DNA of 64,000 nucleotides, from positions 124,001 to 188,000 of the IMG/VR virus record IMGVR_UViG_3300026097_000876; one strand, given 5' to 3'. Numbering within the stretch: the first letter of the stretch is position 1; each line of letters begins with the position of its first letter. The notes below the pieces were generated by a model. It worked only from the letters and a program-made list of their open reading frames with translations, made no database searches and was not told where the DNA came from. This document shows positions 11,728 through 30,522 of this stretch, in pieces. Both the position numbers and the translations under genes were made by a program.

Positions 11728-11730
11728 TCT

Positions 11731-12299: not shown

Positions 12300-12896
12300 T
12301 TAAGATAGATCTACTAGACTGTGTGCAAATTGGTATAAGTTATCAAACACATCAGTTTGTTTTTTTAGATCTTTGTTTGCAAAAGTTTCTAACTTCTTGG
12401 CTGTTTCTTGACCGTATCCTGTACGTACCAAAACTGGTTTAGCTTTTGCTTTGACTGCAGCTTTTAAATCTGTGATTTTGTCTCCAACATATAAACCATT
12501 AGTCCATTTGACGCCTACTTCTGCCGCAGCTCTTTTGAACATACCAGTATTAGGTTTTGCATATATATCATCTTTTAAATTTGTAGTTGAGTAATACAGT
12601 CCGTTAATACTACGACAGCCGATATCTCCTAATAAACTTAACATATGATTATGCACAACATCAACATCGACCGAGTCCATAATGCCTTTCATTATTCCTG
12701 CTTGGTTAGTAAGAATTACGACATCGTATCCTTTGTCTCGAATTATCTTAATTGCTTCGAGACTCCCTTCGATAGGCTTAAATTGTTCTGGCTTGGTTAC
12801 ATATGTGCCTATGTCTTCATTAATAGTTCCATCTCGATCTAATCCAATTACTGGGGGTTGCATATTAATCTCCATAGTTTTAATTAAGGTCTCCAC
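12300..12896 (-). CDS. gmhB: D-glycero-D-manno-heptose 1,7-bisphosphate phosphatase (HAD family)
   Basis: GLDRDGTIN (DxD), VILTNQAGI, AKPNTGMF, YVGDKITDLKAA, VLVRTGYG. Confidence 0.88.
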   Translation of the reverse strand: METLIKTMEINMQPPVIGLDRDGTINEDIGTYVTKPEQFKPIEGSLEAIKIIRDKGYDVVILTNQAGIMKGIMDSVDVDVVHNHMLSLLGDIGCRSINGLYYSTTNLKDDIYAKPNTGMFKRAAAEVGVKWTNGLYVGDKITDLKAAVKAKAKPVLVRTGYGQETAKKLETFANKDLKKQTDVFDNLYQFAHSLVDLS

Positions 12897-13747
12897 CTAT
12901 CGTCGGACCAACCAATTTTATCAGGGTTAAACCATTGTAATTCTTCTAATACAATCGGATCTTTATCTCGATATTGATCGTGCCAGCTGTCAACAAACTG
13001 TTTAGTTTCATCATTTAATGGTTCTATGTATTGTTCTACAAAACTAGCCGCTTCGTGTGTTAACGGATGCACTTCAGCCAAAAGCATATGTGCATGTTCT
13101 TCTTTAAGTGTTGGAACACTTTTTGGCCGTGTTTTGAAAAATTCGTCAGTTACTCCAAAATTTAATGCATTGAGTATAGGAGGACAAGTTGTTTCTATGT
13201 CATCTTTATAAACTTCTAACACAGCTCTAATATCTTCTAATTCTAATTTTTCATTTTGTTGATTAAAAGTTTTAGACTGTTCTTCCCATCCTTCTACTGG
13301 ATCTCTAAAACATGTTGAATAAACTTTACATCCGATTGATTTCAGTGCCTTATGGGTAGAACTAATTATAGCACAATCGCGCATTGTACAATGCATTAAA
13401 TCTGACCACTGCCACTGACCTTCGTACAGATAGTTATTTAAAATAAATTTTTCTTCATTGTGATGAGTAAAATTATTAAAGTTTCCAGGCGTCCACCATC
13501 CTTTACCCATATGATATCTATCTTCTCGAAACATACTGCTCCATTGAAGCAAAATAATATCATCTTTGTTAAATTTATGTACAGTATTTGCTTCCCACAG
13601 GCGTGTATTGATGTACATGTTGCCTGCACCCGACTTGGCCCAATTAGATCCTTCGTATCCTTGAGATTTGTATTGGTGAATTAGAATATCTGCCCACGTA
13701 GGATAAAAATATTGAGTGAGGCTGCATCCAAATGCAAAAATCCTCAA
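12884..13747 (-). CDS. Hypothetical protein, SGNH-like N-terminus
   Basis: RIFAFGCSLT..W and AKSGAGN resemble SGNH blocks I/II; overlaps both neighbours (operon). Confidence 0.5.
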   Translation of the reverse strand: MRIFAFGCSLTQYFYPTWADILIHQYKSQGYEGSNWAKSGAGNMYINTRLWEANTVHKFNKDDIILLQWSSMFREDRYHMGKGWWTPGNFNNFTHHNEEKFILNNYLYEGQWQWSDLMHCTMRDCAIISSTHKALKSIGCKVYSTCFRDPVEGWEEQSKTFNQQNEKLELEDIRAVLEVYKDDIETTCPPILNALNFGVTDEFFKTRPKSVPTLKEEHAHMLLAEVHPLTHEAASFVEQYIEPLNDETKQFVDSWHDQYRDKDPIVLEELQWFNPDKIGWSDDRWRP

Positions 13748-15210
13748 ACCAACCTCCTTAATAAGTCTAACATCATCTTATGTGGAATGGCTCTAATACT
13801 ATCAAAATTAATTTTTTCTTGGCATTTTTGGTTTACATATTGCTGAACGTCTGATGGTAACGTATTATATTGAGATAATATATCTTTATTATTAAATAAT
13901 CCTAGTCCATGCATAACAATTGCATAATTATACTCATTAAACAATATTTTTTTAGTATGAGACGTTAGATCATCAGCAACTGGCATTCGATTTTCCCACA
14001 TTTTAAGATTTTTTTCTAGAGATTCTGGAATAGGAGTATCTGCTACAGCTCTCCAAAATGGTGTGTCTCTTCTTTTTGTTATATAATGTAGTACAATAAA
14101 GTCTCTAATATTGTTCATAATAGAATCAACTTCTACATTATATCGATCAATAGATTCTTGATTATAATTTACTAATCGCTGTGCAAGCAAAAAACTTTGA
14201 TTAATACTAGTTCCAATCGAACTTGCTTCCAACGGTTCAACAAAGCTAGCACTCAGCCCAATTGCACAAACATTATTAATCCATGGGCGATCTAAAGCAC
14301 CAGGATCGAATTTGATGTGTTTAGCAACAGTTACATCGTAACCAAGGTATTCTTCAACTTCTTTTTGCGCTTCCTCGGCTGTAATATAATCACTATCGAA
14401 AATATATCCGTTCCCTTTTCGGTCGTATACTGGAATTCTGAACATCCAACCCGAATTCATAGCTTTAGCTAGTGTCCACATAGGAGTTTCTTCCTCCTCA
14501 GGAGTAGGAAAAACAATAGCTTCCTTCATTTTGAGGTATTTACTGTAGCTATTCCATGTAGCACCCAATTTATTAATTAGTAGACGTTTAAATCCTGTGC
14601 AATCAATATAAAAATCATAATGATAGTCTTGCTTTTCACCTTTTAAAGTTTTAATTTCGCCTTTTAATACATTAACATCTACAATTTCATCATCATATAC
14701 ATTACACCCTTTAGATATTGCAAAATTTGTTAAAAAATCGTTTAACTTGTTAGTGTTAAAATGATATTGACTTACGCCTGTATCATTTGGGCGTTCTTCC
14801 ATAAATTTATTGAAAGGTGTAAGATTTTTCCAAAGATAATCTCCAGTTAAGTCTCGAGGATCAACGTTTTCACCAATTAGTTTGGCATAACACATTGGCA
14901 TTCCGAGATGTTCTCCTACAAACGGATCGTGTACATTTTGTAGATAAGGTTTTTCGCTCCAGTCTTCAAACATAATACCTGCTTTGTAGGTTGCATCACA
15001 CTCTTTTACAAGAGTTCCTGCTGGAATCCCTACATAATCCATAAATGCAGACCAGTGTTCTGTGGATCCTTCGCCTACACCGATTGTTCCTATTTTCGTA
15101 GACCTAATTACATCTACAGTAAAGTTAGGAAAACTTGTTTTTAATATTAATGCGCTTACAAAGCCTGCGGTTCCACCGCCTACCACTGCTATTTTCATAT
15201 TTTTATTCAT
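13744..15210 (-). CDS. Flavin-dependent (tryptophan halogenase, PrnA-like) family protein
   Basis: VVGGGTAG FAD motif, IGVGEGST, DATYKAGI (Lys motif), FYIDCTGF, WMFRIP, GLSASFVEPLEASSI. Confidence 0.88.
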   Translation of the reverse strand: MNKNMKIAVVGGGTAGFVSALILKTSFPNFTVDVIRSTKIGTIGVGEGSTEHWSAFMDYVGIPAGTLVKECDATYKAGIMFEDWSEKPYLQNVHDPFVGEHLGMPMCYAKLIGENVDPRDLTGDYLWKNLTPFNKFMEERPNDTGVSQYHFNTNKLNDFLTNFAISKGCNVYDDEIVDVNVLKGEIKTLKGEKQDYHYDFYIDCTGFKRLLINKLGATWNSYSKYLKMKEAIVFPTPEEEETPMWTLAKAMNSGWMFRIPVYDRKGNGYIFDSDYITAEEAQKEVEEYLGYDVTVAKHIKFDPGALDRPWINNVCAIGLSASFVEPLEASSIGTSINQSFLLAQRLVNYNQESIDRYNVEVDSIMNNIRDFIVLHYITKRRDTPFWRAVADTPIPESLEKNLKMWENRMPVADDLTSHTKKILFNEYNYAIVMHGLGLFNNKDILSQYNTLPSDVQQYVNQKCQEKINFDSIRAIPHKMMLDLLRRLV

Positions 15211-15778
15211 CTAAGGTATACCATCCAGTTACAATATACTTAACGCCTTTATAAATAGGATTACCTCGATGTGGATGTGTAAATGATGTTGGAAAAATAC
15301 AAAGTTTGCCTGGTTCAGGTTTACATTTGACTCCTTGATATAAAAATTCTGTTTCGCCGCCTTCGTCAACAGCATTTAAGTAAACTGTATAAGCAAGTAT
15401 GCGTGATGCTGAACTCAAATCAGCATTTTCACAATGCCAGGCATGATACCCTTGATGAGGTTTAGTTTTTTGTACACTCATTCCTTTAGGAGAGTGTTGC
15501 ATTACGTTTCCTAAACTTTCATATTTGCTGCGATACTTGTCTGTGTAAATTTTATTAAGAGTAGAATAGAAAAAATGACACAAGTCTTCATCAGCATGAT
15601 ATCTCGAATTGTGATTTGCCCAATCCATCATTACACGTTCGTCTTGATTTTTTGCACTGCTTTCTAAATTTGTAAGTTGGCTAGCAGACATTTCTTCAAA
15701 ACGTTTAATTACTTGCTTACACCAATCAATTGGAAAAGCATTTGAATATTCTTCGATTCCGTTAAAATTGCCTTCCAT
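15203..15778 (-). CDS. 2OG-Fe(II) oxygenase (prolyl-4-hydroxylase-like)
   Basis: GYHAWHCE (HxE), YLN..DEGGETEF, FPTSFTHPHRGNP, KYIVTGW. Confidence 0.85.
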   Translation of the reverse strand: MEGNFNGIEEYSNAFPIDWCKQVIKRFEEMSASQLTNLESSAKNQDERVMMDWANHNSRYHADEDLCHFFYSTLNKIYTDKYRSKYESLGNVMQHSPKGMSVQKTKPHQGYHAWHCENADLSSASRILAYTVYLNAVDEGGETEFLYQGVKCKPEPGKLCIFPTSFTHPHRGNPIYKGVKYIVTGWYTLDE

Positions 15779-15786
15779 AATGACTC

Positions 15787-16488
15787 CTAAATAAAAAATT
15801 GTTGATTAATACGGTAGTTGTCGTTTACAAACATATGAGGTTTAACATACGCTGTATGAAGAACTGCCTGATTATACAAAACCATTCTATTAAAAACCAT
15901 CGGCACCATGCCAATCATTTCCCAATCATATGTTGTATCTGTAATATATTCTCTAACAGGATGTTTGCCTTTTACATCTAGCGTATGTGTTATTGAAGTA
16001 TCGTCATAATACGTCTTTCCGCCAAATTTATAAAAACTAGTCCCACCGTTGCACTCGTTAGCCGTATTAAGATAAATCGTTGAAGCTAAATTTCTTCCAC
16101 TAGTATTGTCCATATGAGGACATATAGGAGGTAGATTCTCGCTCTGCATTACATTTACCATAAATGTTGCATTTGTAAAACTACGTATCATATATCCCGG
16201 ATCATATTCTTTCATAATATCTGGAAAATATGTTCTTGCTAATTGATCATAAATCCAAGACATATTAGAAAGTTCATAAAACGCATTAATTCTTAATGCT
16301 GGATTGTTTCCTCTAATGCGCTTGTTTGTTGATGCAGGAATGTTCAAAGCTAGTTCTCGAACCATGTGAGGATTTTTGTAAAAATTATCAACTGAGATAA
16401 CAGTTACATCCCCAAATTTATGAACATATGGTTGATAGTCTGGATTAATTGCAAATACTTCGTCTTCGTCAATTGTTTTTTTATGCAT
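15787..16488 (-). CDS. 2OG-Fe(II) oxygenase-like protein (DUF6445-like)
   Basis: DNFYKNP..VRELA, PHMD (HxD), IYLN...GGTSFY, FNRMVLY...LH. Confidence 0.65.
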   Translation of the reverse strand: MHKKTIDEDEVFAINPDYQPYVHKFGDVTVISVDNFYKNPHMVRELALNIPASTNKRIRGNNPALRINAFYELSNMSWIYDQLARTYFPDIMKEYDPGYMIRSFTNATFMVNVMQSENLPPICPHMDNTSGRNLASTIYLNTANECNGGTSFYKFGGKTYYDDTSITHTLDVKGKHPVREYITDTTYDWEMIGMVPMVFNRMVLYNQAVLHTAYVKPHMFVNDNYRINQQFFI

Positions 16489-17083
16489 CTGTTTTCTCTG
16501 TTAGTATAAAGTTAGCACTAATCGTTGCTCGTATGTCTTGACTTTTATTGTGTGTTACGTAATGTTCCATTACACTAGGAAAATAAATGATATCTCCTTC
16601 AACTAGCGGGGGAGTTACTCTATTATTATATTTAAAAGGCTGTGTAGTTAAACTAGGAAGGTCTGATTGATGGAAAAAATCATATGCATTTTTATAAAAA
16701 ACAAAATTTCCACTATTAGGAGGTACTTTCATCATATATGCACAGCTAATAATACTAGGACCTGCGTGATTATGAACTTCTTGGTGTTGTCCTTGAGAAT
16801 ACCTATTTAACCAACATTCGATTCGATAATCAATTGGAAGATCAATATTAAAAATTTCAAGATATTCGTTTAAACCGTTAATTGCAGACCTAATAAACTT
16901 TTGATATGGCAAGCTATCAGCATCTCGATTTCCAAAGGTAGTGTCAACGTTGCTATACCAAGTATCGACTTTATTAAAATATTCATCAGACTCTAACACT
17001 TGGTTAAAGTCTGTTTGAACATCTTGATGATTGTTTAGTTGTGTCTTATAGACAGGAATTGAGAATAAATCATAGTGTGTCAT
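16481..17083 (-). CDS. 2OG-Fe(II) oxygenase (TIGR02466-like)
   Basis: LFSIPVY, WLNRY..G.HQEVHNH (HxH), EGDIIYFPS..EHYV, RATISANF. Confidence 0.8.
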   Translation of the reverse strand: MTHYDLFSIPVYKTQLNNHQDVQTDFNQVLESDEYFNKVDTWYSNVDTTFGNRDADSLPYQKFIRSAINGLNEYLEIFNIDLPIDYRIECWLNRYSQGQHQEVHNHAGPSIISCAYMMKVPPNSGNFVFYKNAYDFFHQSDLPSLTTQPFKYNNRVTPPLVEGDIIYFPSVMEHYVTHNKSQDIRATISANFILTEKTDA

Positions 17084-17085
17084 TA

Positions 17086-18909
17086 CTAGTTTTTCATTTC
17101 AATTAGTTTACCATATTCGGGCAAGAAACAGTACTCCATTTCACTATTATACAATGTCCTAACAGCGTCGTCAAGTGTTTCCACTAAAGGTTCGCCGCCT
17201 AGATTAAACGATGTATTAAAGATAATCGGAACACCTGTTTGCTCATAGAACGTTTTAATTAAATTATAATAGTGTTTGTTTTGATTTTCAGTAACAGTTT
17301 GAATTCGACATGTGCCGTCAACATGAATAATACTAGGAATTTTTTCTTCAATACCTGGTTGACAGTTCATTGCATACATCATATGCGGAGATTCTTTTAA
17401 TCCTCGCATGTCAAACCATTCGTGTGCATGTTCTAATAAAATAGACCCAGCAAATGGACGGAAGTATTCTCTACGCTTGACTTTGTTTACATAATCTTTA
17501 CCATCTTCTGCAGTAGGGTCAAACAAAATACTTCTGTTACCTAATGCCCTAGGGCCGTTTTCACTTTGCCCTTGAAACATAGTTACAATATTTTTGTTTT
17601 TAATTAAATCAACTACAGTGTTATAATCAGCATCGACAATACTAGCACCATACTTATTTGCTGTTTCTTCGATCTGTTCAGCTGTGTAAGAATATTCAAA
17701 TCCTTCATATATAGTTTCTGCATACGATCTTACTTTTTTATCTTTAGTAGTTTGATGATAAATTAACATTGCGGCGCCGATTGCTGTTCCTGCATCGCTC
17801 GATACTGGCTCTACATATAAATTAATGCCTTCGTCGTTTAGTTTATCAAGATACCAATAGTTGGCTACACAGTTTAATGCGTATCCGCCACTAAGAACTA
17901 CATTTTTATTGCCACTCATTTCCACTGCTTTAAAAATAAGATTTAAAACTTCTTGTTGAGATTGTTCTTGAACAGCGTATGCAAGATCTCTTCTATTTTC
18001 AAGTGTTGTTAAGTCTATATTACTATTTTGCACATCTTGTGAAGTTTCAAGAAACTCATATTTGCCTTCGTTAACTAATGCAGCATTAGGATAAGTAGGA
18101 ATAATTACGTTTCTGTCACTAGTTCTCCATTTTCCGCCATTACCGTCTGTATAAATTGGAGGAATATTATTGTTTGGTTTTCCATATGGTGCTAATCCCA
18201 TTGTTTTGCCAGCTTCAATTGGTTGAAATCCGCAATACTGAGTTACAGCCTCGTATGCTTTAGTAATTCCTGCACTATCATCAAGCACCAGTTCGTGATA
18301 TCCTTCTTCACCTTCTCGATCTGAAGGTATAAATGGCACATGTGCTCCAGGAAACGGTCCATTCGCTCCTTGATGCTTATACAATGTTTTTAAGTTATCA
18401 GGATAATTACAATTAAAAATACTTTCGCATTCCCATGTCATAAATTCTTCTTGGAATTGTCCTGCATTAATATTCATAGGAATAAAAGTACCAGCGCCAT
18501 CAACTACGACAGCTGTTGCTGTTTCAAATCCTGAACGATAAAATGCACAAGCAGCATGAAGTTTATGATGAATGTGACTAAGGTCTATAACTTGTCTATG
18601 ATCAAAATTAGGACCGTATGCACTTTCTGATCGATCAATTAACCCTAATTTTCTTGCTAATCCAGTGTACATGTCTCCACCGCTGAAGTCGATTCTGCTA
18701 GAGTCTGATAGCGGTTGTGTATGTGCCACAACTAGATAATCAAGTTTATCGGTATAATCTAAAAATTTAATCATTGCGGCAAGTGGGCCGCCGTCGTATT
18801 TTTTACGAGTAAGGCGTTCTTCTTCAATTGCAAATACAATTTCACCGTCTTTCAATAAAACAGCACCGCCGTTGTGTCCTCTTGTAATTGCTCCAATCCA
18901 CTGCGTCAT
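17086..18909 (-). CDS. Carbamoyltransferase (NodU/CmcH/TobZ family)
   Basis: GHNGGAVL..DG....AIEEERLTRKK, HHKLHAACAF, VVDGAG, AGKTMGLAPYG, SGGYALNCVAN, DAGTAIGAA, GPRALGNRSIL, RE.FRPFA, HVDGTCRIQTV, NTSFNL.GEPLV. Confidence 0.93.
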   Translation of the reverse strand: MTQWIGAITRGHNGGAVLLKDGEIVFAIEEERLTRKKYDGGPLAAMIKFLDYTDKLDYLVVAHTQPLSDSSRIDFSGGDMYTGLARKLGLIDRSESAYGPNFDHRQVIDLSHIHHKLHAACAFYRSGFETATAVVVDGAGTFIPMNINAGQFQEEFMTWECESIFNCNYPDNLKTLYKHQGANGPFPGAHVPFIPSDREGEEGYHELVLDDSAGITKAYEAVTQYCGFQPIEAGKTMGLAPYGKPNNNIPPIYTDGNGGKWRTSDRNVIIPTYPNAALVNEGKYEFLETSQDVQNSNIDLTTLENRRDLAYAVQEQSQQEVLNLIFKAVEMSGNKNVVLSGGYALNCVANYWYLDKLNDEGINLYVEPVSSDAGTAIGAAMLIYHQTTKDKKVRSYAETIYEGFEYSYTAEQIEETANKYGASIVDADYNTVVDLIKNKNIVTMFQGQSENGPRALGNRSILFDPTAEDGKDYVNKVKRREYFRPFAGSILLEHAHEWFDMRGLKESPHMMYAMNCQPGIEEKIPSIIHVDGTCRIQTVTENQNKHYYNLIKTFYEQTGVPIIFNTSFNLGGEPLVETLDDAVRTLYNSEMEYCFLPEYGKLIEMKN

Positions 18910-19640
18910 ACTTTATTTTCCTTTATGTATTTTAGAATTTTACTTCTATATTTTGCATTTTCAAATGCCTTATAACATTCTGCTAATGGTGTAGGTAAAA
19001 ATCTTTTGGCTTTTAGATTTTTGTAACCTAAACATTGCATTACTGGTCCTGTTTTAGACTCAAACAACTTTGCACTATCAAATCTAATTAACTTAATTTT
19101 TTCTGTAGTATTAAATTTAAAGTAACATAATGTATCGCCCCTTTTTATGTCTATTTCAGATACGTTATCTTTAAACTTAAATGCAGGACGTACAGGTCTA
19201 ATCCAACTTGATATATTATATGTACCAGCAATGCCCATTGTCGCTGACGAAAACTGAGTTTGTTCGTAGTAAGGTGGTAATTGTGTCATACTTAATGGAG
19301 TTTCACTAAAAAATAAAAAATTAGGGTGCTCTATTTGATGTATATTTTCTTTATTTGGTTCGCCAACATAATTAATTAAAAAATTAGGATCAATATCATA
19401 ATTAGACATTACTTCTTTTTTTACATGGTCAAATTTTATATGAAAATCTATAGGACTTTTTGCACTAAATGTGTTTTTAGTTTCATCAACTATAGCGGGA
19501 CATAAACTTGCACCTAACCCAAAAAATTCTCGTGCATTAAGATCCTTATAGACTGTCTCTGGTTCAAAGTATTTCAATTCTGAAACAAACTCCTGACCCT
19601 CTGGGACGTTTATTACCGGAGACCAGTATACTTTGATCAT
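18906..19640 (-). CDS. Hypothetical protein (244 aa)
   Basis: Intact ORF with 4-nt overlaps to both neighbours; no family recognised. Confidence 0.6.
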   Translation of the reverse strand: MIKVYWSPVINVPEGQEFVSELKYFEPETVYKDLNAREFFGLGASLCPAIVDETKNTFSAKSPIDFHIKFDHVKKEVMSNYDIDPNFLINYVGEPNKENIHQIEHPNFLFFSETPLSMTQLPPYYEQTQFSSATMGIAGTYNISSWIRPVRPAFKFKDNVSEIDIKRGDTLCYFKFNTTEKIKLIRFDSAKLFESKTGPVMQCLGYKNLKAKRFLPTPLAECYKAFENAKYRSKILKYIKENKV

Positions 19641-20266
19641 TGGCTATTCTCTACTTCATATAAAAAATCACACACAAACACTCTACGTTCATCAATTGTA
19701 GGATATGTGCCATGCCAAACTCTTCCGTCCATTATAACTACTTCTCCTGCTTTTGGAGTGTGTGTTTGAAAATTTACTTGGTAATCAGGTAACGGTTGTA
19801 ATGTTATTAGATTCCCTGCCATTGGATATTCGATAGACGTTGAGACAGAATTTAAAAACAAGACTGCTGTTAACTGTCGATCATTAACTGTGTCAGTTGG
19901 ACAATTTGCTGTCATAGTATGACAGTGAAATCCAGAATACGAATTCTGTCCATATTTTACACCCCAGGCTTTTCTAAATTCTTTAATACATATTGGAAGA
20001 TTTTCTTGTACGCTGTCTGTAATAAATTTTTGTAAACTTAATGTTGCGTCAATATCTTTTGGGTAATTCATATTATCTTTATGATAAAGATATGCATTAC
20101 CTAGTTGCTTCGATGTTTCGTCGTAATTTGTAAAAATATTTTCAAACTTTTTGTAGTCAGGATAAAACAGCTCGTCAATTATCCAAGTTTCTAGTGTAGT
20201 TTTTCCTGTTTTTTGAGGCTCTATACGTTTTTCCCACAAATTGTTTAAAAAGTCTTCAGTAATCAA
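19637..20266 (-). CDS. Putative 2OG-Fe(II) oxygenase
   Basis: AWGVKY..NSYSGFHCH (HxH), TAVLFLN, GEVVIMDGRVWHGTYP, RRVFVCDF jelly-roll pattern. Confidence 0.65.
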   Translation of the reverse strand: MITEDFLNNLWEKRIEPQKTGKTTLETWIIDELFYPDYKKFENIFTNYDETSKQLGNAYLYHKDNMNYPKDIDATLSLQKFITDSVQENLPICIKEFRKAWGVKYGQNSYSGFHCHTMTANCPTDTVNDRQLTAVLFLNSVSTSIEYPMAGNLITLQPLPDYQVNFQTHTPKAGEVVIMDGRVWHGTYPTIDERRVFVCDFLYEVENSQ

Positions 20267-21315
20267 CTGCCGGTTCTTCCTAAAATTTGTGTAGGTTGAG
20301 TAGTCGAACTACTTGGAGAATGTACTACTCCGTGTGTTGGACAAACTTCTCCTTCGGTCGATGCTTTAAAATTTCCTGTATAGGATCTAGGCTTTCCTAG
20401 TCTTTTACGCACACTTTGGATAATGTCTTTAAAACTATTATCATCTAGTTCCATTACTTCGTCATTAAACCGTTCAATTTCTTCTTCCATTGTAAGTCTA
20501 ATAGGACTGAACTTACGCTTACCTTCGCCTAAGTCAATAATATCAAAATCAGAAGAACTAGGATAAGAAATATTAATAGGATATGTACTTCCGATAACAC
20601 TAGTACATGTTGTACCTAATGCTTTAGCCATGTGCTGTCCTAAACTATCGCACCCTATAAAATGGTCTGCAATTTGTATAACACTTGACCAAACTCTTAC
20701 ATCTGATATTTGCGGAACAGCAATTGGGATTGTTGTGTTTTCTTCTATTACAACTGGAAATTCGCTCATTACAATTACAGCATAATCATTACGTAAATCT
20801 TTACAAATACGTATCACATCATTAAGGTGAAAACTTCTACTAGTTCCATCAATTACAAAGTCTCCCATATTTTCAGCTGTTCGTCCAAAAGGCTGAAATA
20901 CAACTACTTTATCCTTACCTGTTACTGCTTTTACTTCTTCAACAACTTTATAACCATGAACAAGCTCGTGCTTATTCATATAAATTTTTGGATCTCCTAC
21001 TTCTCGTAATCCTTTATTGTTAATTGCAATATCAAATGCTTGTGCAAGGCTACATTTTTGATTATAATATTCCCAAACTCTATAAGGTTCTGGCGTAATA
21101 CAGTCTCTATCTTTAATATAATCTTTAAATAAATTTTTATGCCAATTATCAAAAGCCATTTCGTGTAAAAATGGATGCCCTTTATAAAAATCCATTCCAC
21201 CTTCACAAATAATAATAAAGTCTTGATCTTCTTCGTATAATTTTTCAAAAGCAGGAATAGAACAAACTACTCTACCGGCTCCACCGTTTATAAAATATGC
21301 TTTTTTTCTAGACAA
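20263..21315 (-). CDS. GT9-like (heptosyltransferase-type) glycosyltransferase
   Basis: GGAGRVVCSIPA (cf. GGxGD), VVVFQPFG, and IQIADHFIGCDSLGQHMAKALG..TSVIGST (cf. GT9 ADLFIGNDSG.MHLA.ALG). TTG start with an AGGAG RBS. Confidence 0.65.
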   Translation of the reverse strand: MSRKKAYFINGGAGRVVCSIPAFEKLYEEDQDFIIICEGGMDFYKGHPFLHEMAFDNWHKNLFKDYIKDRDCITPEPYRVWEYYNQKCSLAQAFDIAINNKGLREVGDPKIYMNKHELVHGYKVVEEVKAVTGKDKVVVFQPFGRTAENMGDFVIDGTSRSFHLNDVIRICKDLRNDYAVIVMSEFPVVIEENTTIPIAVPQISDVRVWSSVIQIADHFIGCDSLGQHMAKALGTTCTSVIGSTYPINISYPSSSDFDIIDLGEGKRKFSPIRLTMEEEIERFNDEVMELDDNSFKDIIQSVRKRLGKPRSYTGNFKASTEGEVCPTHGVVHSPSSSTTQPTQILGRTGS

Positions 21316-21338
21316 TGTAATGCTCCTAATTCTAAAAA

Positions 21339-21346
21339 TATTTATA
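21339..21346 (-). promoter_or_regulatory. Late promoter, perfect TATAAATA
   Basis: Exact T4 late consensus on the minus strand, 24 nt upstream of the GT9 start and downstream of a terminator. Confidence 0.75.
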
Positions 21347-21379
21347 GAAGCAAACTTAAAAATTAACTAATCTTGGTTC

Positions 21380-21414
21380 AAAAAAAATCCCTATACATTA
21401 CTGTACAGGGATTT
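21380..21414 (-). terminator. Rho-independent terminator
   Basis: Minus strand AAUCCCUGUACA-GUAA-UGUAUAGGGAUU followed by a U-tract, just after the chaperone gene. Confidence 0.75.
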
Positions 21415-21437
21415 AAATTTATAGTATTAAAAATATC

Positions 21438-22226
21438 TTATTTTTTACCGGCTGTTTTTTGTGCAGCAACTTTAACATCAACTGAAAAGGCACCATCTCT
21501 ATACGGATCTGATGGATCGGCTGACGAATCTGGCTCTCTCATATCTTTAGGGTAAACAGGAAACATCTGAATTGCTTGCCATGGCTCAAACCCTAAATCT
21601 TGCATTACAGATGGAAATTCTCTTAATCGTTGTCTAAACAAGATCCATTCATCTTGAAGTGATTGAGGAGCATCAGTCTGTCCAACCTTGGCATCTGTTT
21701 CTTGTAACATAGCGTCACGAACATCTCGTAACTCTTGCCATGTAAGATCCATTTTCGAGCCTGTGGCAGCCCAATCTCTTATGCCAATATTAAATTCACC
21801 TGTTTCAAAATCGTATGTAATATTATTATCATCGTAAATATCACGAGGTTCTACATCATCTGTGTACTCAACATCTGGGTGCCCGTCCGGTGCGTCCCAA
21901 AGAATTTCCCACTCGCGTTGACGTCTTTTTAATATCATATCATCGCGACCGCAATCATTTCCAATTTCACAGAGCAATGGCTGTTGTTTACAGTCTACAG
22001 TAACTCTTGTGATATCAGCACCTGATGGACGTTCAAGATCTCTCTTTTCCCATAAGCACCAACCCGATTCAGTACCGTAATCTTCACTGTCCGGATCGCT
22101 GTTAACTTCAAAGGTTAAAAACTCTGGTCCGTTATAAGTAAATGTGTCGGTTTTTCCTTCTGTAAAACTGTTTGTTCTCCATTCGTCCCACACAGGATAT
22201 GTAAACTCTATACTAATTTTTCTCAT
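21438..22226 (-). CDS. Tail fibre assembly chaperone-like protein
   Basis: C-terminal WQELRDVRDAMLQETD....DAP....EWILFRQRLREFP matches the phage tail assembly chaperone R..R..LL.ETD...D.P...W..YRQ.LRD.P pattern; directly follows the Cys-rich trio. Confidence 0.7.
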   Translation of the reverse strand: MRKISIEFTYPVWDEWRTNSFTEGKTDTFTYNGPEFLTFEVNSDPDSEDYGTESGWCLWEKRDLERPSGADITRVTVDCKQQPLLCEIGNDCGRDDMILKRRQREWEILWDAPDGHPDVEYTDDVEPRDIYDDNNITYDFETGEFNIGIRDWAATGSKMDLTWQELRDVRDAMLQETDAKVGQTDAPQSLQDEWILFRQRLREFPSVMQDLGFEPWQAIQMFPVYPKDMREPDSSADPSDPYRDGAFSVDVKVAAQKTAGKK

Positions 22227-22245
22227 TTATTCTAACTCCTAAAAG

Positions 22246-22252
22246 TATTTAT
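22246..22252 (-). promoter_or_regulatory. Late promoter (ATAAATA)
   Basis: Motif between the stop of Cys-rich paralog 1 and the RBS of the chaperone gene. Confidence 0.55.
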
Positions 22253-22258
22253 CCGTTA

Positions 22259-23095
22259 TTACATGAATGTGATTCGTACTATACCAGAACCGCCCTGGCC
22301 CGAACCACCTCCACAACATTTCGCCCAATTACCGCAATATGAACTGTAACCTGCTTGGCCTCCGCCTGCTGGCCAGTCAATGTGACACCCACATGAGCAC
22401 CAAGAAACGTTAGTTACACCTACTTGCATTTTACCAATCATTGGCGGTGAACCTGAAAATGAATACGAATAGTTACAATGACATCCGCCATGTCCTGGTT
22501 CTGTGCCCGATGTGCCCATCATACCAAAATCTGCACCAAAAATACCGCAAATATTACAATTACCACATGTATGTGTGTGTCTTGGACCCCAAGCATCACC
22601 GTTACACATCCAGCCGCCACAGCCGCCTACTGTACAAAAATTTGATAAATTATGTCCGTTTACATATGACTTACATCCCATGCCTGCACCACAAGTATGT
22701 GATTTACCACAAGGCCAACTACCACCTGCGCAAACACTATATTGACAACCTGGACTAGTTTCAACAGTTTTTGATGCATAATTTCCGCCGGATCCGCCGA
22801 TACTAAATGAACAGTTGTTACAACAAGTCATGCCAGGGCCTCCGCCTCCGCCACTCCATATTTCAAATGTTACAGTTGATACTCCGTCTGGTACACACCA
22901 ATAGCAACATTTGCCATTTGCTTGTTCACAACAACCACTTTGTCTGGCACACGAGTGGCAGGCCATGCCACGTGCGTTATAGACCCATTGTACTCCATAG
23001 TTATTACCATTTCCGTGTGCAATATCACTATCTTGAATAGTTCCGTCTACTAAACTGTCATTGTCTACTTTTTTATAACTTGCATATGTTGCCAT
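22259..23095 (-). CDS. Cys/Gly-rich putative fibre-tip protein, paralog 1
   Basis: About 29 Cys in 278 aa; glycine-rich-domain scaffold TFEIWSGGGGG...GGSGG.Y...AGG...GGSGIVRIT. Confidence 0.75.
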   Translation of the reverse strand: MATYASYKKVDNDSLVDGTIQDSDIAHGNGNNYGVQWVYNARGMACHSCARQSGCCEQANGKCCYWCVPDGVSTVTFEIWSGGGGGPGMTCCNNCSFSIGGSGGNYASKTVETSPGCQYSVCAGGSWPCGKSHTCGAGMGCKSYVNGHNLSNFCTVGGCGGWMCNGDAWGPRHTHTCGNCNICGIFGADFGMMGTSGTEPGHGGCHCNYSYSFSGSPPMIGKMQVGVTNVSWCSCGCHIDWPAGGGQAGYSSYCGNWAKCCGGGSGQGGSGIVRITFM

Positions 23096-23105
23096 TTATT
23101 TTTTC

Positions 23106-23942
23106 CTATGCGTATGTAATTCTGACCATGCCTGATCCACCCATATTGCCGCCGGCACAACATTTTGCCCAATTGCCGCAATATGAACTTTGTCCTGTTT
23201 GACCGCCACCTGCTGGCCAATTTGTATAGCAAGCACAGTTACACCATGCTTCTGCGTTTGCTCCTGCTGTATGCTTACCAACAAAAGGTGCAACTCCACT
23301 CATACCCCAGTCACCCGATTTACATTGACAACCACCGTGACCACCGGATACTCCAGTTGAGCCCATAATACCAAAATCTGCACCAAAAATGCCACAAATA
23401 TTACAGTTAGCACATGTTTGTGTGTGTCTTGGTCCCCATGCGTCGCCATTACACATCCAGCCAGGGCAACCGCCTGTTGTGCAGAAGTTACTTAAATTAT
23501 ATCCGTTTACATATGAACGGCAACCCATGCCTGCTGTACATGTGTGTGACTTTGAACAAGGCCAAGTTCCTCCAGCACATACTTGATACTGACAACCTGG
23601 ACATGTACTAATTGTTTTAACAGCATAGTTCCCGCCGCTACCACCTGCGGAGTGCATACAATAGTTACAGCAAGTAGAACCTGCTCCTGCACCGCCTCCA
23701 CTCCAAATTTCAAAAGTTACCTTTGATGCTCCATCTGGTACACACCAATAGCAACATCTACCATTTGCTTGTTCACAGCAGTCGCCGGCGTCAGCACAGT
23801 GTTGACAAGCCATGCCACGAGTATTGTATACCCATAATACATTATACTTGTTACCGGCTTGCGGTCCTAATTTCTCAGCTGTAATAGCATTATCGCTAAA
23901 GTTATCTGCTGTTAAAGTTTTATAACTTGCATATGTTGCCAT
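23106..23942 (-). CDS. Cys/Gly-rich putative fibre-tip protein, paralog 2
   Basis: Same Cys framework and length as paralog 1. Confidence 0.75.
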   Translation of the reverse strand: MATYASYKTLTADNFSDNAITAEKLGPQAGNKYNVLWVYNTRGMACQHCADAGDCCEQANGRCCYWCVPDGASKVTFEIWSGGGAGAGSTCCNYCMHSAGGSGGNYAVKTISTCPGCQYQVCAGGTWPCSKSHTCTAGMGCRSYVNGYNLSNFCTTGGCPGWMCNGDAWGPRHTQTCANCNICGIFGADFGIMGSTGVSGGHGGCQCKSGDWGMSGVAPFVGKHTAGANAEAWCNCACYTNWPAGGGQTGQSSYCGNWAKCCAGGNMGGSGMVRITYA

Positions 23943-23952
23943 TTATCTTTTC

Positions 23953-24792
23953 CTATACATAAGTAATTTTTACAATTCCGGAGCCGCCTTGTCCGGAGCC
24001 ACCTGCACAACATTTTGCCCAATTGTCGCAATAACTAGATGTTCCGGGCGTTCCTCCGCCTGCTGGCCAATTAACGTGACAACCGCAAGCACACCATGCT
24101 TCGTTGGTCATTGTTGCTAAATGCATACCAATACCTGCAGCTGCGCCCGTCCAGCTTGTTTGTCCGTGACATCTACAAGTAGTAGTACCTGCTTTAATAC
24201 CAGCACTACCAGACATTCCAAAATCTGCACCAAAGATGCCACAAATTCTACAGTTAGCACAGTTTGATACAGCGTGTCTTTGACCCCAAGCGTCTCCGTT
24301 ACACATCCATCCGCCGCAGCCTCCGTCAGTGCAAAAATTAGATAAGTTATGTCCATTTACGTATGACTTACATCCCATACCTGCTGTACATGTGTGTGAT
24401 TTACCACAAGGCCAACTACCACCTGCACATACTTGATACTGACAACCAGGAGTGGTATCAACGGTTTTAATGGCATAGTTTCCGCCAAATCCACCAACTG
24501 CAAAACTACAATTGTTACAACATGTGTGTCCGGGGCCACCACCGCCTCCACTCCATATTTCAAAAGTTACTTTATATACATTGTCAGGTACACACCAATA
24601 GCAACATCTACCATTTGCTTGTTCACAACAACCACTTTGTCTGGCGCATTGTTGACAAGCCATGCCACGTGTGTTATAGACCCATTGTACTCTACGACAA
24701 GCACCGGCACCTGCAGCTAATTTATCCGAGGTAATAGTGCCTTCTGGAATACCGTCTGATGTTATTTTTTTATAACTTGCATATGATGCCAT
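23953..24792 (-). CDS. Cys/Gly-rich putative fibre-tip protein, paralog 3
   Basis: Same Cys framework; 279 aa. Confidence 0.75.
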   Translation of the reverse strand: MASYASYKKITSDGIPEGTITSDKLAAGAGACRRVQWVYNTRGMACQQCARQSGCCEQANGRCCYWCVPDNVYKVTFEIWSGGGGGPGHTCCNNCSFAVGGFGGNYAIKTVDTTPGCQYQVCAGGSWPCGKSHTCTAGMGCKSYVNGHNLSNFCTDGGCGGWMCNGDAWGQRHAVSNCANCRICGIFGADFGMSGSAGIKAGTTTCRCHGQTSWTGAAAGIGMHLATMTNEAWCACGCHVNWPAGGGTPGTSSYCDNWAKCCAGGSGQGGSGIVKITYV

Positions 24793-24810: not shown

Positions 24811-25260
24811 TTATACAGCAAAGATACGCCAGCCGTATGTGTCACCTGAATAAACTAAATCAAATGATGCGCCTTCTGAATCAACAGTCATATCAGCAGC
24901 ATCGCCTTGAATTAGATTAGAGTTTCTACCTATTGTTAGTGCGTTAGAATCAAACGTTTTACGAATGTCATAAAACCTAACAATATCGCCCATAGACGGT
25001 GAAGCAGGAAGCGTAATTGTAAACGCACCACTGTTTGTATCAACAAACAACTGTTCTCCTGAATTAGCATTATACGCGGTTGTAACCATTTTACCGTTCA
25101 ATACTCCCACAGGTATCCAAGCAGTTCCATTATATAGTTCTAATACGTTAATTTCTGTGTTAAAACGTATAGATCCTGCTCCAGCATCTTCAGTTCGCTG
25201 TGCTGTATTACCAAAAGGAACAGTTAACCCTGGTGAACCGATTGAAATTCTTCTACCCAT
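24811..25260 (-). CDS. Small fibre-type structural protein (149 aa)
   Basis: P.GNTAQR...G.IRFNT....LELYNG..W motif shared with the C-termini of the 36165-39881 and 40018-44073 products; VDTNSGAFTITLPASPS.GD fibre motif. Confidence 0.7.
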   Translation of the reverse strand: MGRRISIGSPGLTVPFGNTAQRTEDAGAGSIRFNTEINVLELYNGTAWIPVGVLNGKMVTTAYNANSGEQLFVDTNSGAFTITLPASPSMGDIVRFYDIRKTFDSNALTIGRNSNLIQGDAADMTVDSEGASFDLVYSGDTYGWRIFAV

Positions 25261-25275
25261 AGTATTTTCCTATCC

Positions 25276-30486: not shown

Positions 30487-30513
30487 TTTTTGCTCCGTTC
30501 TTGGTATTATACA

Positions 30514-30520
30514 TATTTAT
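30514..30520 (-). promoter_or_regulatory. Late promoter (ATAAATA)
   Basis: 28 nt upstream of the 30486 start. Confidence 0.6.
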
Positions 30521-30522
30521 CA

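What the first reader, a model, noticed from the sequence alone, without database searches (positions are those of the whole stretch)
12300..24792. Candidate virion-decoration system: Cys-rich paralog trio + chaperone + 10-gene late tailoring operon
Three Cys-rich genes and a fibre chaperone are followed by a terminator, a perfect TATAAATA promoter, and ten co-oriented genes, mostly overlapping. These are GT9-like transferase, 2OG oxygenase, unknown, carbamoyltransferase, three more 2OG-type oxygenases, halogenase, SGNH-like protein and GmhB. The set resembles a natural-product tailoring cluster, but no small precursor or synthase is visible. It is embedded among structural genes under late control. 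Inference: it post-translationally modifies (glycosylates, carbamoylates, hydroxylates, halogenates) fibre-tip proteins or their glycans, changing receptor binding or particle stability.
Basis: partly seen in the sequence, partly recalled or inferred. Interest (0 to 1): 0.8.

Follow-up and report, generated by a model that had tools for sequence, protein, structure and literature searches.

The report
Cyanophage tail-fibre tips with sugar-tailoring operon
A marine T4-like cyanophage carries three glycine- and cysteine-rich tail-fibre tip genes and their chaperone, always followed by a late-promoter operon for heptose transfer, carbamoylation, oxidation and halogenation. The linkage suggests, but does not prove, that the phage decorates its own receptor-binding fibres with a modified sugar.

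Summary
All 14 genes lie on the minus strand at the stated coordinates, with the terminator, a TATAAATA box and seven overlapping junctions out of nine.

The trio are predicted fibre proteins. Their best fold match is the cyanophage Pam3 fibre gp24, which has a TNF-like and a glycine-rich domain. The next gene is a Tfa-type chaperone.

The first operon gene has a GT9 heptosyltransferase fold. It is followed by a TobZ/NodU-type O-carbamoyltransferase, four 2OG-type oxygenases, DUF6065, a flavin halogenase, a possible SGNH-like protein and GmhB.

The order fibre, chaperone, GT9-like gene, carbamoyltransferase was kept in every informative locus of three samples of phage contigs. Cultured cyanophages with the GT9-like gene are exactly those with the fibre gene. 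Oxygenases and halogenases are variable add-ons.

The cluster type is already known as cyanophage 'LPS genes' and as dioxygenase/halogenase neighbourhoods, with no tested function.

Best reading (about 0.4): late, cytoplasmic attachment of a carbamoylated heptose to the fibre tips. This rests on linkage only. No expression or mass-spectrometry data were available, and a WaaC catalytic Asp aligns with an invariant Arg.

The parts
25636..35439 (-). Two giant tail-fibre proteins (1638 aa at 30523-35439 and 1616 aa at 25636-30486). Each has five N-terminal CBM_5_12-type repeats. They lie directly upstream of the module.
   Evidence: A fibre gene is found upstream in 47/48 related loci that have at least 6 kb of upstream DNA.
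24811..25602 (-). Two small fibre-related proteins: 108 aa at 25276-25602 and 149 aa at 24811-25260.
   Evidence: PHROG tail and tail-fibre hits. They hold the same place in related loci.
22259..24792 (-). Three tandem paralogues (279, 278 and 278 aa) rich in Gly and Cys. They are predicted TNF-like plus glycine-rich-domain fibre proteins, and so likely receptor-binding tips.
   Evidence: Composition and identity. Family phrog_4205, no Pfam hit. AF2 model with pLDDT 73.5. Foldseek best hits are the Pam3 fibre 7ypx_A/7yfw_a (E 9e-8, TM 0.51-0.56), then the Bxb1 tail tip, then ALK/LTK glycine-rich domains.
21438..22226 (-). Tfa-type tail-fibre assembly chaperone (262 aa).
   Evidence: Pfam Phage_tail_APC E 1.1e-3 on residues 164-208, below the curated cut-off. 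PHROG tail fibre assembly protein 1.9e-6. Same position as the Pam3 chaperone gp25 after fibre gp24 (PMC9608196).
21316..21437 (-). Intergenic control region: intrinsic-terminator hairpin 21414-21385, T4-type late promoter box TATAAATA 21346-21339, AGGAG ribosome-binding site, TTG start at 21315.
   Evidence: An NATAAATA motif occurs before the GT9-like gene in 64/80 related loci.
20263..21315 (-). GT9-fold (GT-B) glycosyltransferase-like protein (350 aa; cyanophage gene cluster T4-GC 302; phrog_8954). It is the predicted heptosyl transferase.
   Evidence: AF2 model with pLDDT 78. The 18 best Foldseek PDB hits are all GT9 heptosyltransferases, as are 30 of the best 31 (3tov, WaaF, WaaC, TibC; E 3e-9 to 3e-4). 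The DSxGQH motif is kept and the N-terminal GGAGR motif is invariant.
19637..20266 (-). 2OG-Fe(II) oxygenase-like protein (209 aa) with an H-C-H sequence where HxD/E is expected.
18906..19640 (-). DUF6065-like protein (244 aa). Its relatives may have a dUTPase-like fold.
   Evidence: phrog_17480. ESM Atlas: DUF6065 clusters score 0.97. The structure search there, run on the model of the nearest hit, gave only weak dUTPase matches (TM 0.40-0.60). Present in only 12/54 related loci.
17086..18909 (-). O-carbamoyltransferase of the NodU/TobZ/GdmN/NovN family (607 aa).
   Evidence: Pfam Carbam_trans_C 3.6e-58 and Carbam_trans_N 3.1e-28. PDB relatives 7xb6, GdmN, NovN and TobZ. Follows the GT9-like gene in 137/137 loci.
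15203..17083 (-). Three 2OG-type oxygenases: 2OG-FeII_Oxy_5/TIGR02466 (16481-17083), DUF6445 with HMD...H (15787-16488), and P4H-like 2OG-FeII_Oxy_3 with HCE...H (15203-15778).
13744..15210 (-). Flavin-dependent Trp-type halogenase (488 aa). It keeps GxGxxG, the catalytic-type Lys in CDATYK, EPLE, and a WMFRIP motif.
   Evidence: Pfam 6.5e-95. Motifs. PDB relatives include the cyanophage halogenase VirX1 (6qgm), 3e-45.
12884..13747 (-). 287-aa protein, possibly SGNH/GDSL-like (N-terminal FGCSLT). Function unproven.
   Evidence: No Pfam, PHROG or PDB hit. ESM Atlas neighbours carry DUF6071 or Lipase_GDSL. Motif seen.
12300..12896 (-). GmhB-like HAD-IIIA phosphatase (198 aa, DRDGT motif). It is the last gene of the operon.
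   Evidence: [quoted passage not shown] Motif.
1..3740 (+).
   Evidence: The contig further left holds gp15, a NUDIX gene and halogenase 3.

Best explanation
What it is. This is a conserved late 'fibre tip plus sugar-tailoring' module of T4-like marine cyanophages.

Fibre part. The three Gly/Cys-rich genes encode short trimeric fibre or adhesin proteins of the Pam3-gp24 type, with a TNF-like and a glycine-rich domain. They are folded with the help of the Tfa-like chaperone encoded next to them.

Proposed mechanism.
- The phage makes ADP-heptose itself, using HldE, GmhB and an HldD-like epimerase plus a cupin. Cyanobacterial LPS is reported to lack this sugar.
- The GT9-fold transferase attaches the heptose to an acceptor in the cytoplasm late in infection.
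- The TobZ/NodU-type enzyme O-carbamoylates it, as is proposed for WapO and the second inner-core heptose (HepII) of Pseudomonas LPS.
- Lineage-specific oxygenases, halogenases and the SGNH-like protein add further changes, either to the glycan or to neighbouring side chains.
- The most likely acceptor is the fibre-tip protein encoded directly upstream. In that case the product is a decorated receptor-binding tip.

Shown: gene content, folds, motifs, the late-promoter motif and the conserved linkage.

Inferred: enzyme activities, the donor sugar, the acceptor and the biological effect.
For: Folds and families.
- Fibre fold of the trio, with the matching gp24/gp25 fibre-chaperone arrangement in Pam3 (PMC9608196).
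- GT9 fold of the first operon gene: 30 of the 31 best PDB hits are heptosyltransferases, among them the protein O-heptosyltransferase TibC. The donor-site DSxGQH motif is kept.
- The best NCBIfam hits are HldE (8.7e-106), ADP-heptose 6-epimerase (4e-65) and GmhB (7e-39).
- The carbamoyltransferase is related to sugar and hydroxyl O-carbamoyltransferases.

Linkage.
- Carbamoyltransferase after the GT9-like gene: 79/79 and 58/58 loci.
- Gly-rich fibre gene before it: 61/61 and 56/56 loci.
- GT9-like gene after the fibre gene: 50/50 loci.
- Cultured cyanophages with the GT9-like gene are exactly those with the fibre gene.
- Distant GT9-like homologues in N4-like Vibrio phages and an Aeromonas phage also sit among tail genes, next to Cys-rich tail proteins.

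Timing and place.
- A late-promoter motif is conserved and the phage has a gp55 late sigma factor.
- The genes share strand and region with baseplate and fibre genes.
- No enzyme has a membrane segment.

Background.
- Cyanobacterial LPS is reported to lack heptose and Kdo, so the classical GT9 acceptor should be missing in the host (PMC4390846).
- Carbamoylated heptose made with a GT9 enzyme plus a NodU-type enzyme has a precedent in Pseudomonas core LPS (PMC8005017).
Against: - There is no direct evidence for any modification of virion proteins.
- Published virion proteomes cover only phages that lack this module (S-SM1, S-PM2, Syn9).
- No RNA run holding this sequence was listed, so late timing rests on a sequence motif.
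- The GT9-like protein has no significant sequence match to GT9. In a weak hhalign alignment, WaaC Asp13 lines up with an invariant Arg15 of the phage family. That Asp13 is a catalytic residue is my recollection, not a tool result. The protein might therefore use another mechanism or have no activity.
- No GmhA isomerase was found in the window or in the 8 kb to its left, so the heptose pathway depends on a host or unknown enzyme.
- Heptose genes also occur in S-SM2 (PMC3037559), which has neither the GT9-like gene nor the fibre gene in the tblastn searches.
- The sampled loci are related phages, so the counts are not independent events.
Confidence: 0.4

Rival explanations
1. Host surface remodelling. 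The enzymes build a carbamoylated heptose glycan on a host envelope molecule, such as a lipid-linked glycan or an outer-membrane component. This could block superinfection or stop progeny from sticking to lysed cells. It is the 'LPS gene' reading of the cyanophage literature.
For: - The published interpretation of the same gene clusters in P-SSM2 and S-SSM7 is LPS or surface modification (PMC1079782, PMC3037559, PMC12801897).
- The best structural relatives include the LPS heptosyltransferases WaaC and WaaF.
- Carbamoyl-heptose is known from LPS cores (PMC8005017).
Against: - Cyanobacterial LPS is reported to lack heptose and Kdo, the classical acceptor context (PMC4390846).
- No flippase, ligase or membrane protein is encoded in the module.
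- The strict adjacency to the Gly-rich fibre and chaperone genes and the late promoter are not explained by this reading.
Confidence: 0.22
2. Linked but separate functions. The GT9-like protein is a non-catalytic or differently acting fibre assembly factor. The other enzymes are ordinary auxiliary metabolic genes collected in a hyperplastic region next to the fibre genes. They would act on soluble host metabolites, for example by consuming 2-oxoglutarate or making sugar nucleotides.
For: - An invariant Arg sits where WaaC has Asp13, and there is no significant sequence match to GT9.
- Enzyme content downstream of the carbamoyltransferase varies strongly between lineages.
- The enzyme genes have a lower G+C (0.34-0.35) than the flanking structural genes (0.38-0.41).
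- A role in 2OG and nitrogen-stress physiology was proposed in PMC3037559.
Against: - The carbamoyltransferase is never separated from the GT9-like gene (137/137 loci).
- The heptose genes form a coherent pathway.
- The donor-site motif of the GT9-like protein is invariant.
Confidence: 0.2
3. Small-molecule natural product. The oxygenases, halogenases, carbamoyltransferase and sugar genes make a halogenated, glycosylated secondary metabolite during infection, as Iyer and co-workers proposed for the cyanophage dioxygenase/halogenase neighbourhoods.
For: - PMC2938197 describes tandem dioxygenases, Trp halogenases and a dUTPase-fold protein in Syn9 and proposes metabolite synthesis.
- The DUF6065-like protein here may belong to that family.
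- The cyanophage halogenase VirX1 halogenates small aromatic compounds in vitro (PMC8407142; relation).
Against: - No scaffold synthase (NRPS, PKS or RiPP precursor) and no exporter is present.
- The halogenases and most oxygenases are missing from many lineages that keep the fibre, GT9-like, carbamoyltransferase and heptose core.
- This reading does not explain the fibre linkage or the late promoter.
Confidence: 0.1
4. DNA hypermodification. The GT-B enzyme and the sugar pathway glycosylate phage DNA, as the T-even phage glucosyltransferases do, to evade restriction.
For: - T4 DNA glucosyltransferases also have a GT-B fold (my own knowledge).
- PMC12801897 speculates that cyanophage glycosyltransferases may protect DNA.
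Against: - The late-promoter motif and the position inside the fibre and baseplate module do not fit a replication-coupled function.
- The specific fold matches are heptosyltransferases, not DNA glucosyltransferases.
- No base-hydroxymethylating enzyme was seen in the window.
Confidence: 0.03

Closest known systems
Cyanophage 'LPS gene' cluster T4-GC 299-308 of P-SSM2, S-SSM7, S-CAM1 and S-CAM3 (Sullivan 2005 and 2010)
   Same: - Same gene families in the same order: fibre, Gly-rich protein(s), about 240-aa protein, about 370-aa protein (T4-GC 302), carbamoyltransferase, heptose genes.
- Identity to the window proteins is 43-68%.
   Different: - No nucleotide-level match to any deposited phage.
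- This lineage splits the enzymes into two blocks 8.5 kb apart.
- It has three halogenases and four 2OG-type genes, and a fused HldE.
- It uses a 198-aa GmhB instead of the roughly 110-aa HAD protein of the reference phages.
Pam3 tail fibre gp24 with chaperone gp25 (PDB 7ypx, 7yfw; PMC9608196)
   Same: - Best structural match of the trio.
- Similar size (about 280 aa), a TNF-like plus glycine-rich domain, and a Tfa-like chaperone gene directly downstream.
   Different: - Sequence identity is only 17% in the Foldseek alignment.
- The marine family has about 10% Cys, with 29 invariant positions in the trio.
- It comes in 1-3 tandem copies.
- It is attached to a T4-like particle that also has giant fibres.
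TibC/TibA and AAH/AIDA-I protein O-heptosylation (PDB 4rap, 4rb4)
   Same: - A GT9-fold enzyme uses ADP-heptose on a protein adhesin encoded next to it, in the cytoplasm.
- TibC chains account for 23 of the 31 best fold hits.
   Different: - No sequence similarity was detectable.
- The TibC iron-finger and dodecamer features were not tested.
- The substrate here would be a phage fibre, not an autotransporter.
Pseudomonas LPS inner core: WaaC/WaaF plus the carbamoyltransferase WapO (PA5005), giving 7-O-carbamoyl-heptose (PMC8005017)
   Same: The same combination of chemistry: ADP-heptose, GT9 transferases and a NodU-type carbamoyltransferase.
   Different: - The acceptor there is Kdo-lipid A, which cyanobacteria are reported to lack (PMC4390846).
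- Here the genes are phage-borne, behind a late promoter and next to fibre genes.
Virion glycosylation by virus-encoded enzymes: mycobacteriophages (Freeman 2023, cited in PMC12801897), and chloroviruses and mimivirus (my own knowledge)
   Same: Glycosyltransferase genes sit next to the structural genes they modify. Giant viruses also encode their own sugar-nucleotide pathways.
   Different: Heptose, carbamoylation and halogenases have not been reported in those systems, to my knowledge. Here nothing has been shown chemically.
Cyanophage dioxygenase/halogenase neighbourhoods (Syn9; Iyer et al. 2010, PMC2938197) and the halogenase VirX1 (PMC8407142)
   Same: Tandem distant 2OG oxygenases, Trp-type halogenases and a possible dUTPase-fold protein (DUF6065-like).
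   Different: In this window they are embedded in the fibre, GT9-like, carbamoyltransferase and heptose module. In many relatives that module exists without them.

Membership tests
CAZy GT9 heptosyltransferases (WaaC, WaaF, TibC) | GT-B fold with two Rossmann-like domains | tested here: met
   AF2 model with pLDDT 78 and pTM 0.79. 30 of the 31 best Foldseek PDB hits are GT9 enzymes, with E 3e-9 to 3e-4 and TM about 0.4-0.54.
CAZy GT9 heptosyltransferases (WaaC, WaaF, TibC) | Significant sequence match to the Glyco_transf_9 profile | tested here: not met
   Pfam PF01075 E 0.15 on residues 211-252 only. NCBIfam heptosyltransferase III E 1.8e-3 on 36 residues. No GT9 chain was found by profile search of the PDB.
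CAZy GT9 heptosyltransferases (WaaC, WaaF, TibC) | Donor-site D(S/T)GxxH motif in the C-terminal domain | tested here: met
   The invariant D223-S-x-G-Q-H228 motif aligns with the WaaF NDSGLMH motif. The alignment is weak.
CAZy GT9 heptosyltransferases (WaaC, WaaF, TibC) | N-terminal catalytic Asp (WaaC Asp13; the role of this residue is recalled from the literature, not tested) | tested here: not met
   hhalign places the invariant Arg15 (GGAGR) opposite WaaC Asp13 (SMGD). The alignment probability is low, so this is only indicative.
CAZy GT9 heptosyltransferases (WaaC, WaaF, TibC) | Uses ADP-heptose as donor | not testable with these tools
   The only support is the co-encoded HldE, HldD and GmhB.
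Glycine-rich-domain tail fibres and adhesins (Pam3 gp24, S16 gp38 type) | TNF-like or beta-sandwich domain plus a glycine-rich motif lattice | tested here: met
   Foldseek hits 7ypx_A and 7yfw_a at E 9e-8 and 1e-5, then the Bxb1 tail tip, then ALK/LTK glycine-rich domains. GGGG-type motifs are conserved across the family. Model confidence is moderate (pLDDT 73.5).
Glycine-rich-domain tail fibres and adhesins (Pam3 gp24, S16 gp38 type) | Dedicated Tfa-type chaperone encoded directly downstream | tested here: met
   The 262-aa gene has tail-fibre-assembly hits in PHROGs and a weak one in Pfam. It is present in 71/73 related loci.
Glycine-rich-domain tail fibres and adhesins (Pam3 gp24, S16 gp38 type) | Present in the virion and binds the host receptor | not testable with these tools
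   No proteome exists for a phage with this gene. The published proteomes are for S-SM1, S-PM2 and Syn9.
NodU/TobZ O-carbamoyltransferases | Kae1-like N-terminal domain plus YrdC-like C-terminal domain | tested here: met
   Carbam_trans_N 3.1e-28 and Carbam_trans_C 3.6e-58. PDB relatives 7xb6, GdmN, NovN and TobZ at 1.7e-54 to 3e-41.
Flavin-dependent (Trp-type) halogenases | GxGxxG, a WxWxIP-type motif, the catalytic Lys and the conserved Glu | tested here: met
   Halogenase 1 has GGGTAG, WMFRIP (the second Trp is Phe), CDATYK and FVEPLE. Halogenase 2 has GWCWQIP, CDATIK and FAEPLE. Pfam scores are 6.5e-95 and 4.5e-55.
ADP-L-glycero-D-manno-heptose pathway (GmhA, HldE, GmhB, HldD) | All four enzyme activities encoded | tested here: not met
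   HldE (8.7e-106), an HldD-like epimerase (4e-65) and a GmhB-like phosphatase (7e-39) are present, all below the curated equivalog cut-offs. No GmhA was found in the window or in L089. The 'phosphoheptose isomerase' of the reference phages is a roughly 110-aa DxDxT HAD-like protein.
T4-type late transcription unit | TATAAATA box at about -10 and a phage gp55 sigma factor | tested here: met
   The box lies 24 nt before the start codon. gp55 is at 61542-62381. The motif is conserved in 64/80 loci. Actual timing was not measured.

The most novel reading that the evidence does not exclude
Cyanophages chemically tailor their receptor-binding fibre tips. A phage-made heptose is attached to the Gly/Cys-rich tip proteins and carbamoylated. 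In some lineages the tip or its glycan is also hydroxylated and halogenated by the co-encoded 2OG oxygenases and flavin halogenases. This would be the first enzymatically halogenated or carbamoyl-heptosylated virion protein, and the variable enzyme set would act as a combinatorial layer of host-range variation on top of sequence variation.
Probability: 0.12. Interest if true: 0.9.

Novelty: new variant of a known kind. Interest (0 to 1): 0.6.

Why it matters
The GT9-like family alone has 3,885 homologues in public metagenomes. The module sits in cultured model cyanophages that infect Prochlorococcus and Synechococcus.

Since 2005 these genes have been filed as 'LPS genes', 'stuffer DNA' or metabolite genes, without a test. 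The strict linkage to a Pam3-type fibre tip and its chaperone, behind a late promoter, turns this into a concrete hypothesis that can be tested cheaply.

If fibres are glycosylated and carbamoylated, host recognition by abundant ocean viruses would depend on post-translational chemistry that sequence-based host-range predictions miss. The long-unknown natural substrates of viral halogenases such as VirX1 would also gain a candidate.

If the hypothesis fails, the result still narrows the function of a very common set of marine phage genes.

Tried and rejected
- Nucleotide search of the 12.5-kb region against deposited phages: no match.
- Single-sequence and profile searches of the PDB for the trio, the GT9-like protein, the 244-aa protein and the 287-aa protein: nothing significant. 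The GT9-like protein gave only weak sirtuin-type Rossmann hits.
- Defence-system profiles (PADLOC): only a generic 2OG domain. I therefore dropped a defence or anti-defence reading.
- Collagen-like G-X-Y repeats as a target for the P4H-like oxygenases: none in the large structural proteins.
- Heterotrimer idea (three paralogues for one trimeric fibre): weakened. Copy number is 2 or 1 in other lineages, and paralogues group by lineage rather than by position at depth.
- Expression evidence: no RNA run was listed for the operon, and only the source DNA run holds the sequence.
- Supplement of PMC7238727: it holds ortholog lists only, with no expression class for these genes.
- Search for GmhA with the reference phages' 'phosphoheptose isomerase': no hit, and that protein looks like a small HAD phosphatase instead.
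- Literature search for phage-encoded heptosylation of fibres: nothing found in the held library.

Full report
**Source and context**

The window is bases 124,001-188,000 of IMG/VR contig IMGVR_UViG_3300026097_000876, which is 261,806 bp long. It is a T4-like cyanomyovirus.
- It encodes the gp55 late sigma factor, gp46/47, portal, prohead protease, major head protein, baseplate wedge proteins and a gp10-like connector.
- It has no nucleotide-level match to deposited phages.
- By protein similarity its nearest cultured relatives are Synechococcus phages S-SSM7 and Sf-FS3, with 67-68% identity in the carbamoyltransferase.

**The observation**

The three paralogues (279, 278 and 278 aa) have 29-30 Cys and 50-57 Gly each. 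They are 67-71% identical, and 29 Cys are invariant.

Between the chaperone gene and the first enzyme gene lie four elements:
- a hairpin with a 13-bp stem and a T run (21414-21385);
- TATAAATA (21346-21339);
- AGGAG;
- a TTG start at 21315.

The ten enzyme genes follow with seven overlapping junctions out of nine.

TATAAATA is not over-represented in the window: 6 copies against 8.95 expected. However, four of the six copies lie 24-62 nt upstream of gene starts in the correct orientation. The genes they precede include the gp10-like and baseplate-hub genes.

**The fibre part**

The trio has no Pfam, NCBIfam or PDB sequence match. It belongs to phrog_4205.

An exhaustive HMMER search found 179 representative relatives. 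They share a pattern of the type CCxWTVPxGV..FE.WGGGG...GG.GG.Y...PGGGG...G.V.ITY.

An AlphaFold model built on that alignment (pLDDT 73.5) gave these matches:
- best, the tail fibre of cyanophage Pam3 (7ypx_A, E 9e-8; 7yfw_a);
- then chains of the mycobacteriophage Bxb1 tail tip;
- then, weakly, the ALK/LTK glycine-rich domains.

Pam3 gp24 is a 280-residue trimeric fibre with a TNF-like and a glycine-rich receptor-binding domain. It needs the Tfa-like chaperone gp25, which is encoded next to it (PMC9608196).

The 262-aa gene after the trio has tail-fibre-assembly hits (Pfam E 1e-3, below the cut-off; PHROG 1.9e-6). The trio plus chaperone is therefore a triplicated gp24/gp25-type module. It sits behind two giant fibres (1638 and 1616 aa) and two small fibre-related proteins.

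**The enzyme part**

1. The first gene (350 aa) has no significant sequence match, but its family is large: 3,885 homologues, none with a Pfam domain.
   - Its model (pLDDT 78) matches GT9 heptosyltransferases almost exclusively. 30 of the 31 best PDB hits are the Veillonella GT9 protein, WaaF, WaaC or the protein heptosyltransferase TibC.
   - The invariant DSxGQH motif aligns with the WaaF donor-site motif.
   - The invariant GGAGR motif places an Arg opposite WaaC Asp13. That alignment is weak, and the catalytic role of Asp13 is my recollection.
2. Next comes a weak 2OG oxygenase with H-C-H where HxD/E is expected.
3. Then a DUF6065-like protein. It may belong to the dUTPase-fold family that Iyer et al. 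noted in the Syn9 cluster.
4. Then a NodU/TobZ/GdmN-type O-carbamoyltransferase.
5. Then three more 2OG-type proteins.
6. Then a flavin halogenase with intact motifs, related to the cyanophage enzyme VirX1.
7. Then a 287-aa protein with only a lead towards SGNH/GDSL.
8. Last, a GmhB-like phosphatase.

None of these proteins has a membrane segment.

Window 1-3740 (plus strand) holds a second halogenase, a fused HldE (8.7e-106), an HldD-like epimerase (4e-65) and a WbuC-like cupin. The contig to the left adds gp15, a NUDIX protein and a third halogenase.

The phage therefore encodes three of the four steps to ADP-L-glycero-D-manno-heptose. No GmhA was found. The 'phosphoheptose isomerase' annotated in S-SSM7, P-SSM2 and the S-CAM phages is in fact a roughly 110-aa protein with a DxDxT HAD motif.

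**Conservation of the linkage**

Reference phages. S-SSM7, Sf-FS3, S-CAM1, S-CAM3 and P-SSM2 belong to at least four genera. All show the same order: fibre, Gly-rich gene(s), about 240-aa gene, GT9-like gene, carbamoyltransferase, heptose genes.

Deposited cyanophages. The records with the GT9-like gene and those with the Gly-rich gene are the same phages. Carbamoyltransferases and halogenases are more widely spread.

IMG/VR samples:

| Sample | Result |
|---|---|
| 80 contigs nearest the window's GT9-like gene, plus the 5 reference loci | carbamoyltransferase downstream in 79/79; chaperone in 71/73; Gly-rich gene upstream in 61/61 |
| Contigs found starting from the Gly-rich family | GT9-like gene downstream in 50/50; carbamoyltransferase in 46/47 |
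| 80 contigs nearest the P-SSM2 GT9-like gene | Gly-rich gene upstream in 56/56; carbamoyltransferase downstream in 58/58; heptose genes usually adjacent; few halogenases |

An NATAAATA motif precedes the GT9-like gene in 64 of 80 loci.

Distant GT9-like homologues (24-26% identity) in N4-like Vibrio phages and Aeromonas phage HJ05 also lie among tail genes, next to unusually Cys-rich tail proteins.

These loci are related phages, so the counts show a deeply conserved neighbourhood, not independent events.

**Interpretation**

The constant core is the fibre tip, the chaperone, the GT9-fold protein and the O-carbamoyltransferase. An ADP-heptose pathway is usually close by. The oxygenases, halogenases, DUF6065 and the SGNH-like gene are lineage-specific additions.

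The chemistry has a precedent. The inner core of Pseudomonas LPS carries a carbamoylated heptose that is made with GT9 enzymes and the putative carbamoyltransferase WapO (PMC8005017).

Cyanobacterial LPS is reported to lack heptose and Kdo (PMC4390846). That would explain why the phage carries its own sugar pathway, and it argues against the classical LPS acceptor.

GT9-fold enzymes can also heptosylate proteins encoded next to them, as TibC does for TibA. Mycobacteriophage glycosyltransferases likewise sit next to the virion genes they modify (Freeman 2023, cited in PMC12801897).

Together with the late promoter and the cytoplasmic nature of all the enzymes, the best-supported mechanism is late cytoplasmic attachment of a carbamoylated heptose to the fibre-tip proteins, with optional further tailoring. 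I put this at about 0.4.

The rivals are:
- host surface remodelling, the published 'LPS gene' reading (0.22);
- a non-catalytic or unrelated role for the GT9-like protein, with the other genes acting as ordinary auxiliary metabolic genes (0.2);
- a small-molecule product (0.1);
- DNA modification (0.03).

**What is missing**

No transcript data and no virion mass spectrometry exist for a phage with this module. The acceptor, the donor and every enzyme activity are inferred.

**Novelty**

The gene cluster type is already in the literature as T4-GC 299-308 'LPS genes' (PMC1079782, PMC3037559) and as dioxygenase/halogenase neighbourhoods (PMC2938197).

Three things are new here:
- the identification of the Gly/Cys-rich genes as Pam3-type fibre tips;
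- the GT9 fold of T4-GC 302;
- the quantified, two-way linkage between them.

No paper in the held library reports phage-encoded heptosylation of fibres.

I rate this a new variant of a known kind (virus-encoded virion glycosylation), not yet demonstrated. Interest is 0.6.

Noticed in passing
window 1-1284 (+), window 13744-15210 (-), and L089 6199-7710 (+): The phage carries three separate flavin-dependent Trp-type halogenase genes. Two are tandem copies after gp15 and a NUDIX gene. The third is in the late operon. All have strong Pfam scores, and the two I inspected keep the key motifs.
   Followed up: partly
L001 21468-21803, L004 18767-19111, L005 18607-18930, L002 18660-18986: The gene annotated 'phosphoheptose isomerase' (T4-GC 306) in S-SSM7, P-SSM2, S-CAM1 and Sf-FS3 is only 107-114 aa. 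It starts with a DxDxT motif typical of HAD phosphatases, not of the SIS-domain enzyme GmhA. It probably replaces GmhB, so no phage of this group seems to encode GmhA.
   Followed up: partly
window 19637-20266 (-): This 2OG-type protein has H-C-H where its paralogue at 15203-15778 has H-C-E. It may have a three-His metal site, or it may be inactive.
   Followed up: no
window 22259-24792 and related loci: The tandem Gly/Cys-rich fibre genes keep a lineage-typical copy number: 3 in the window-like and S-SSM7-like lineages, mostly 2 in the P-SSM2-like lineage, and 1 in others. Paralogues cluster by lineage rather than by position. This suggests repeated duplication or gene conversion.
   Followed up: partly
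L086 6998-10519 (Vibrio phage SBP1) and L087 5258-7921 (Aeromonas phage HJ05): Distant homologues of the GT9-like protein occur in N4-like phages, directly beside large tail proteins with 4.2-4.4% Cys. Their neighbouring proteins have at most about 2%. The link between this protein family and Cys-rich tail proteins may extend beyond cyanophages.
   Followed up: partly
window 12001-22000 and 1-4000 compared with 4001-12000 and 24001-34000: The enzyme genes have G+C of 0.34-0.35. The flanking structural genes have 0.38-0.41, and the trio region has 0.44, which fits its many Gly codons. The enzyme blocks are compositionally distinct from the structural genes.
   Followed up: no
window 25636-35439 (-): Both giant fibre proteins begin with five CBM_5_12-type carbohydrate-binding repeats (E 2.8e-38 and 3.6e-46).
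   Followed up: no
window 20263-21700: The only public run listed as holding this DNA is labelled 'soil metagenome', yet every relative found is a marine or aquatic cyanophage. The sample label may be misleading.
   Followed up: no
window 20263-21315 (-), residues 7-91: The N-terminal GGAGRxxxSIPAF motif of the GT9-like protein gives weak profile hits to the NAD-binding region of sirtuin-5 (E 0.018). This is probably a shared Rossmann feature, because the fold search found no sirtuin among the 50 listed hits.
   Followed up: partly
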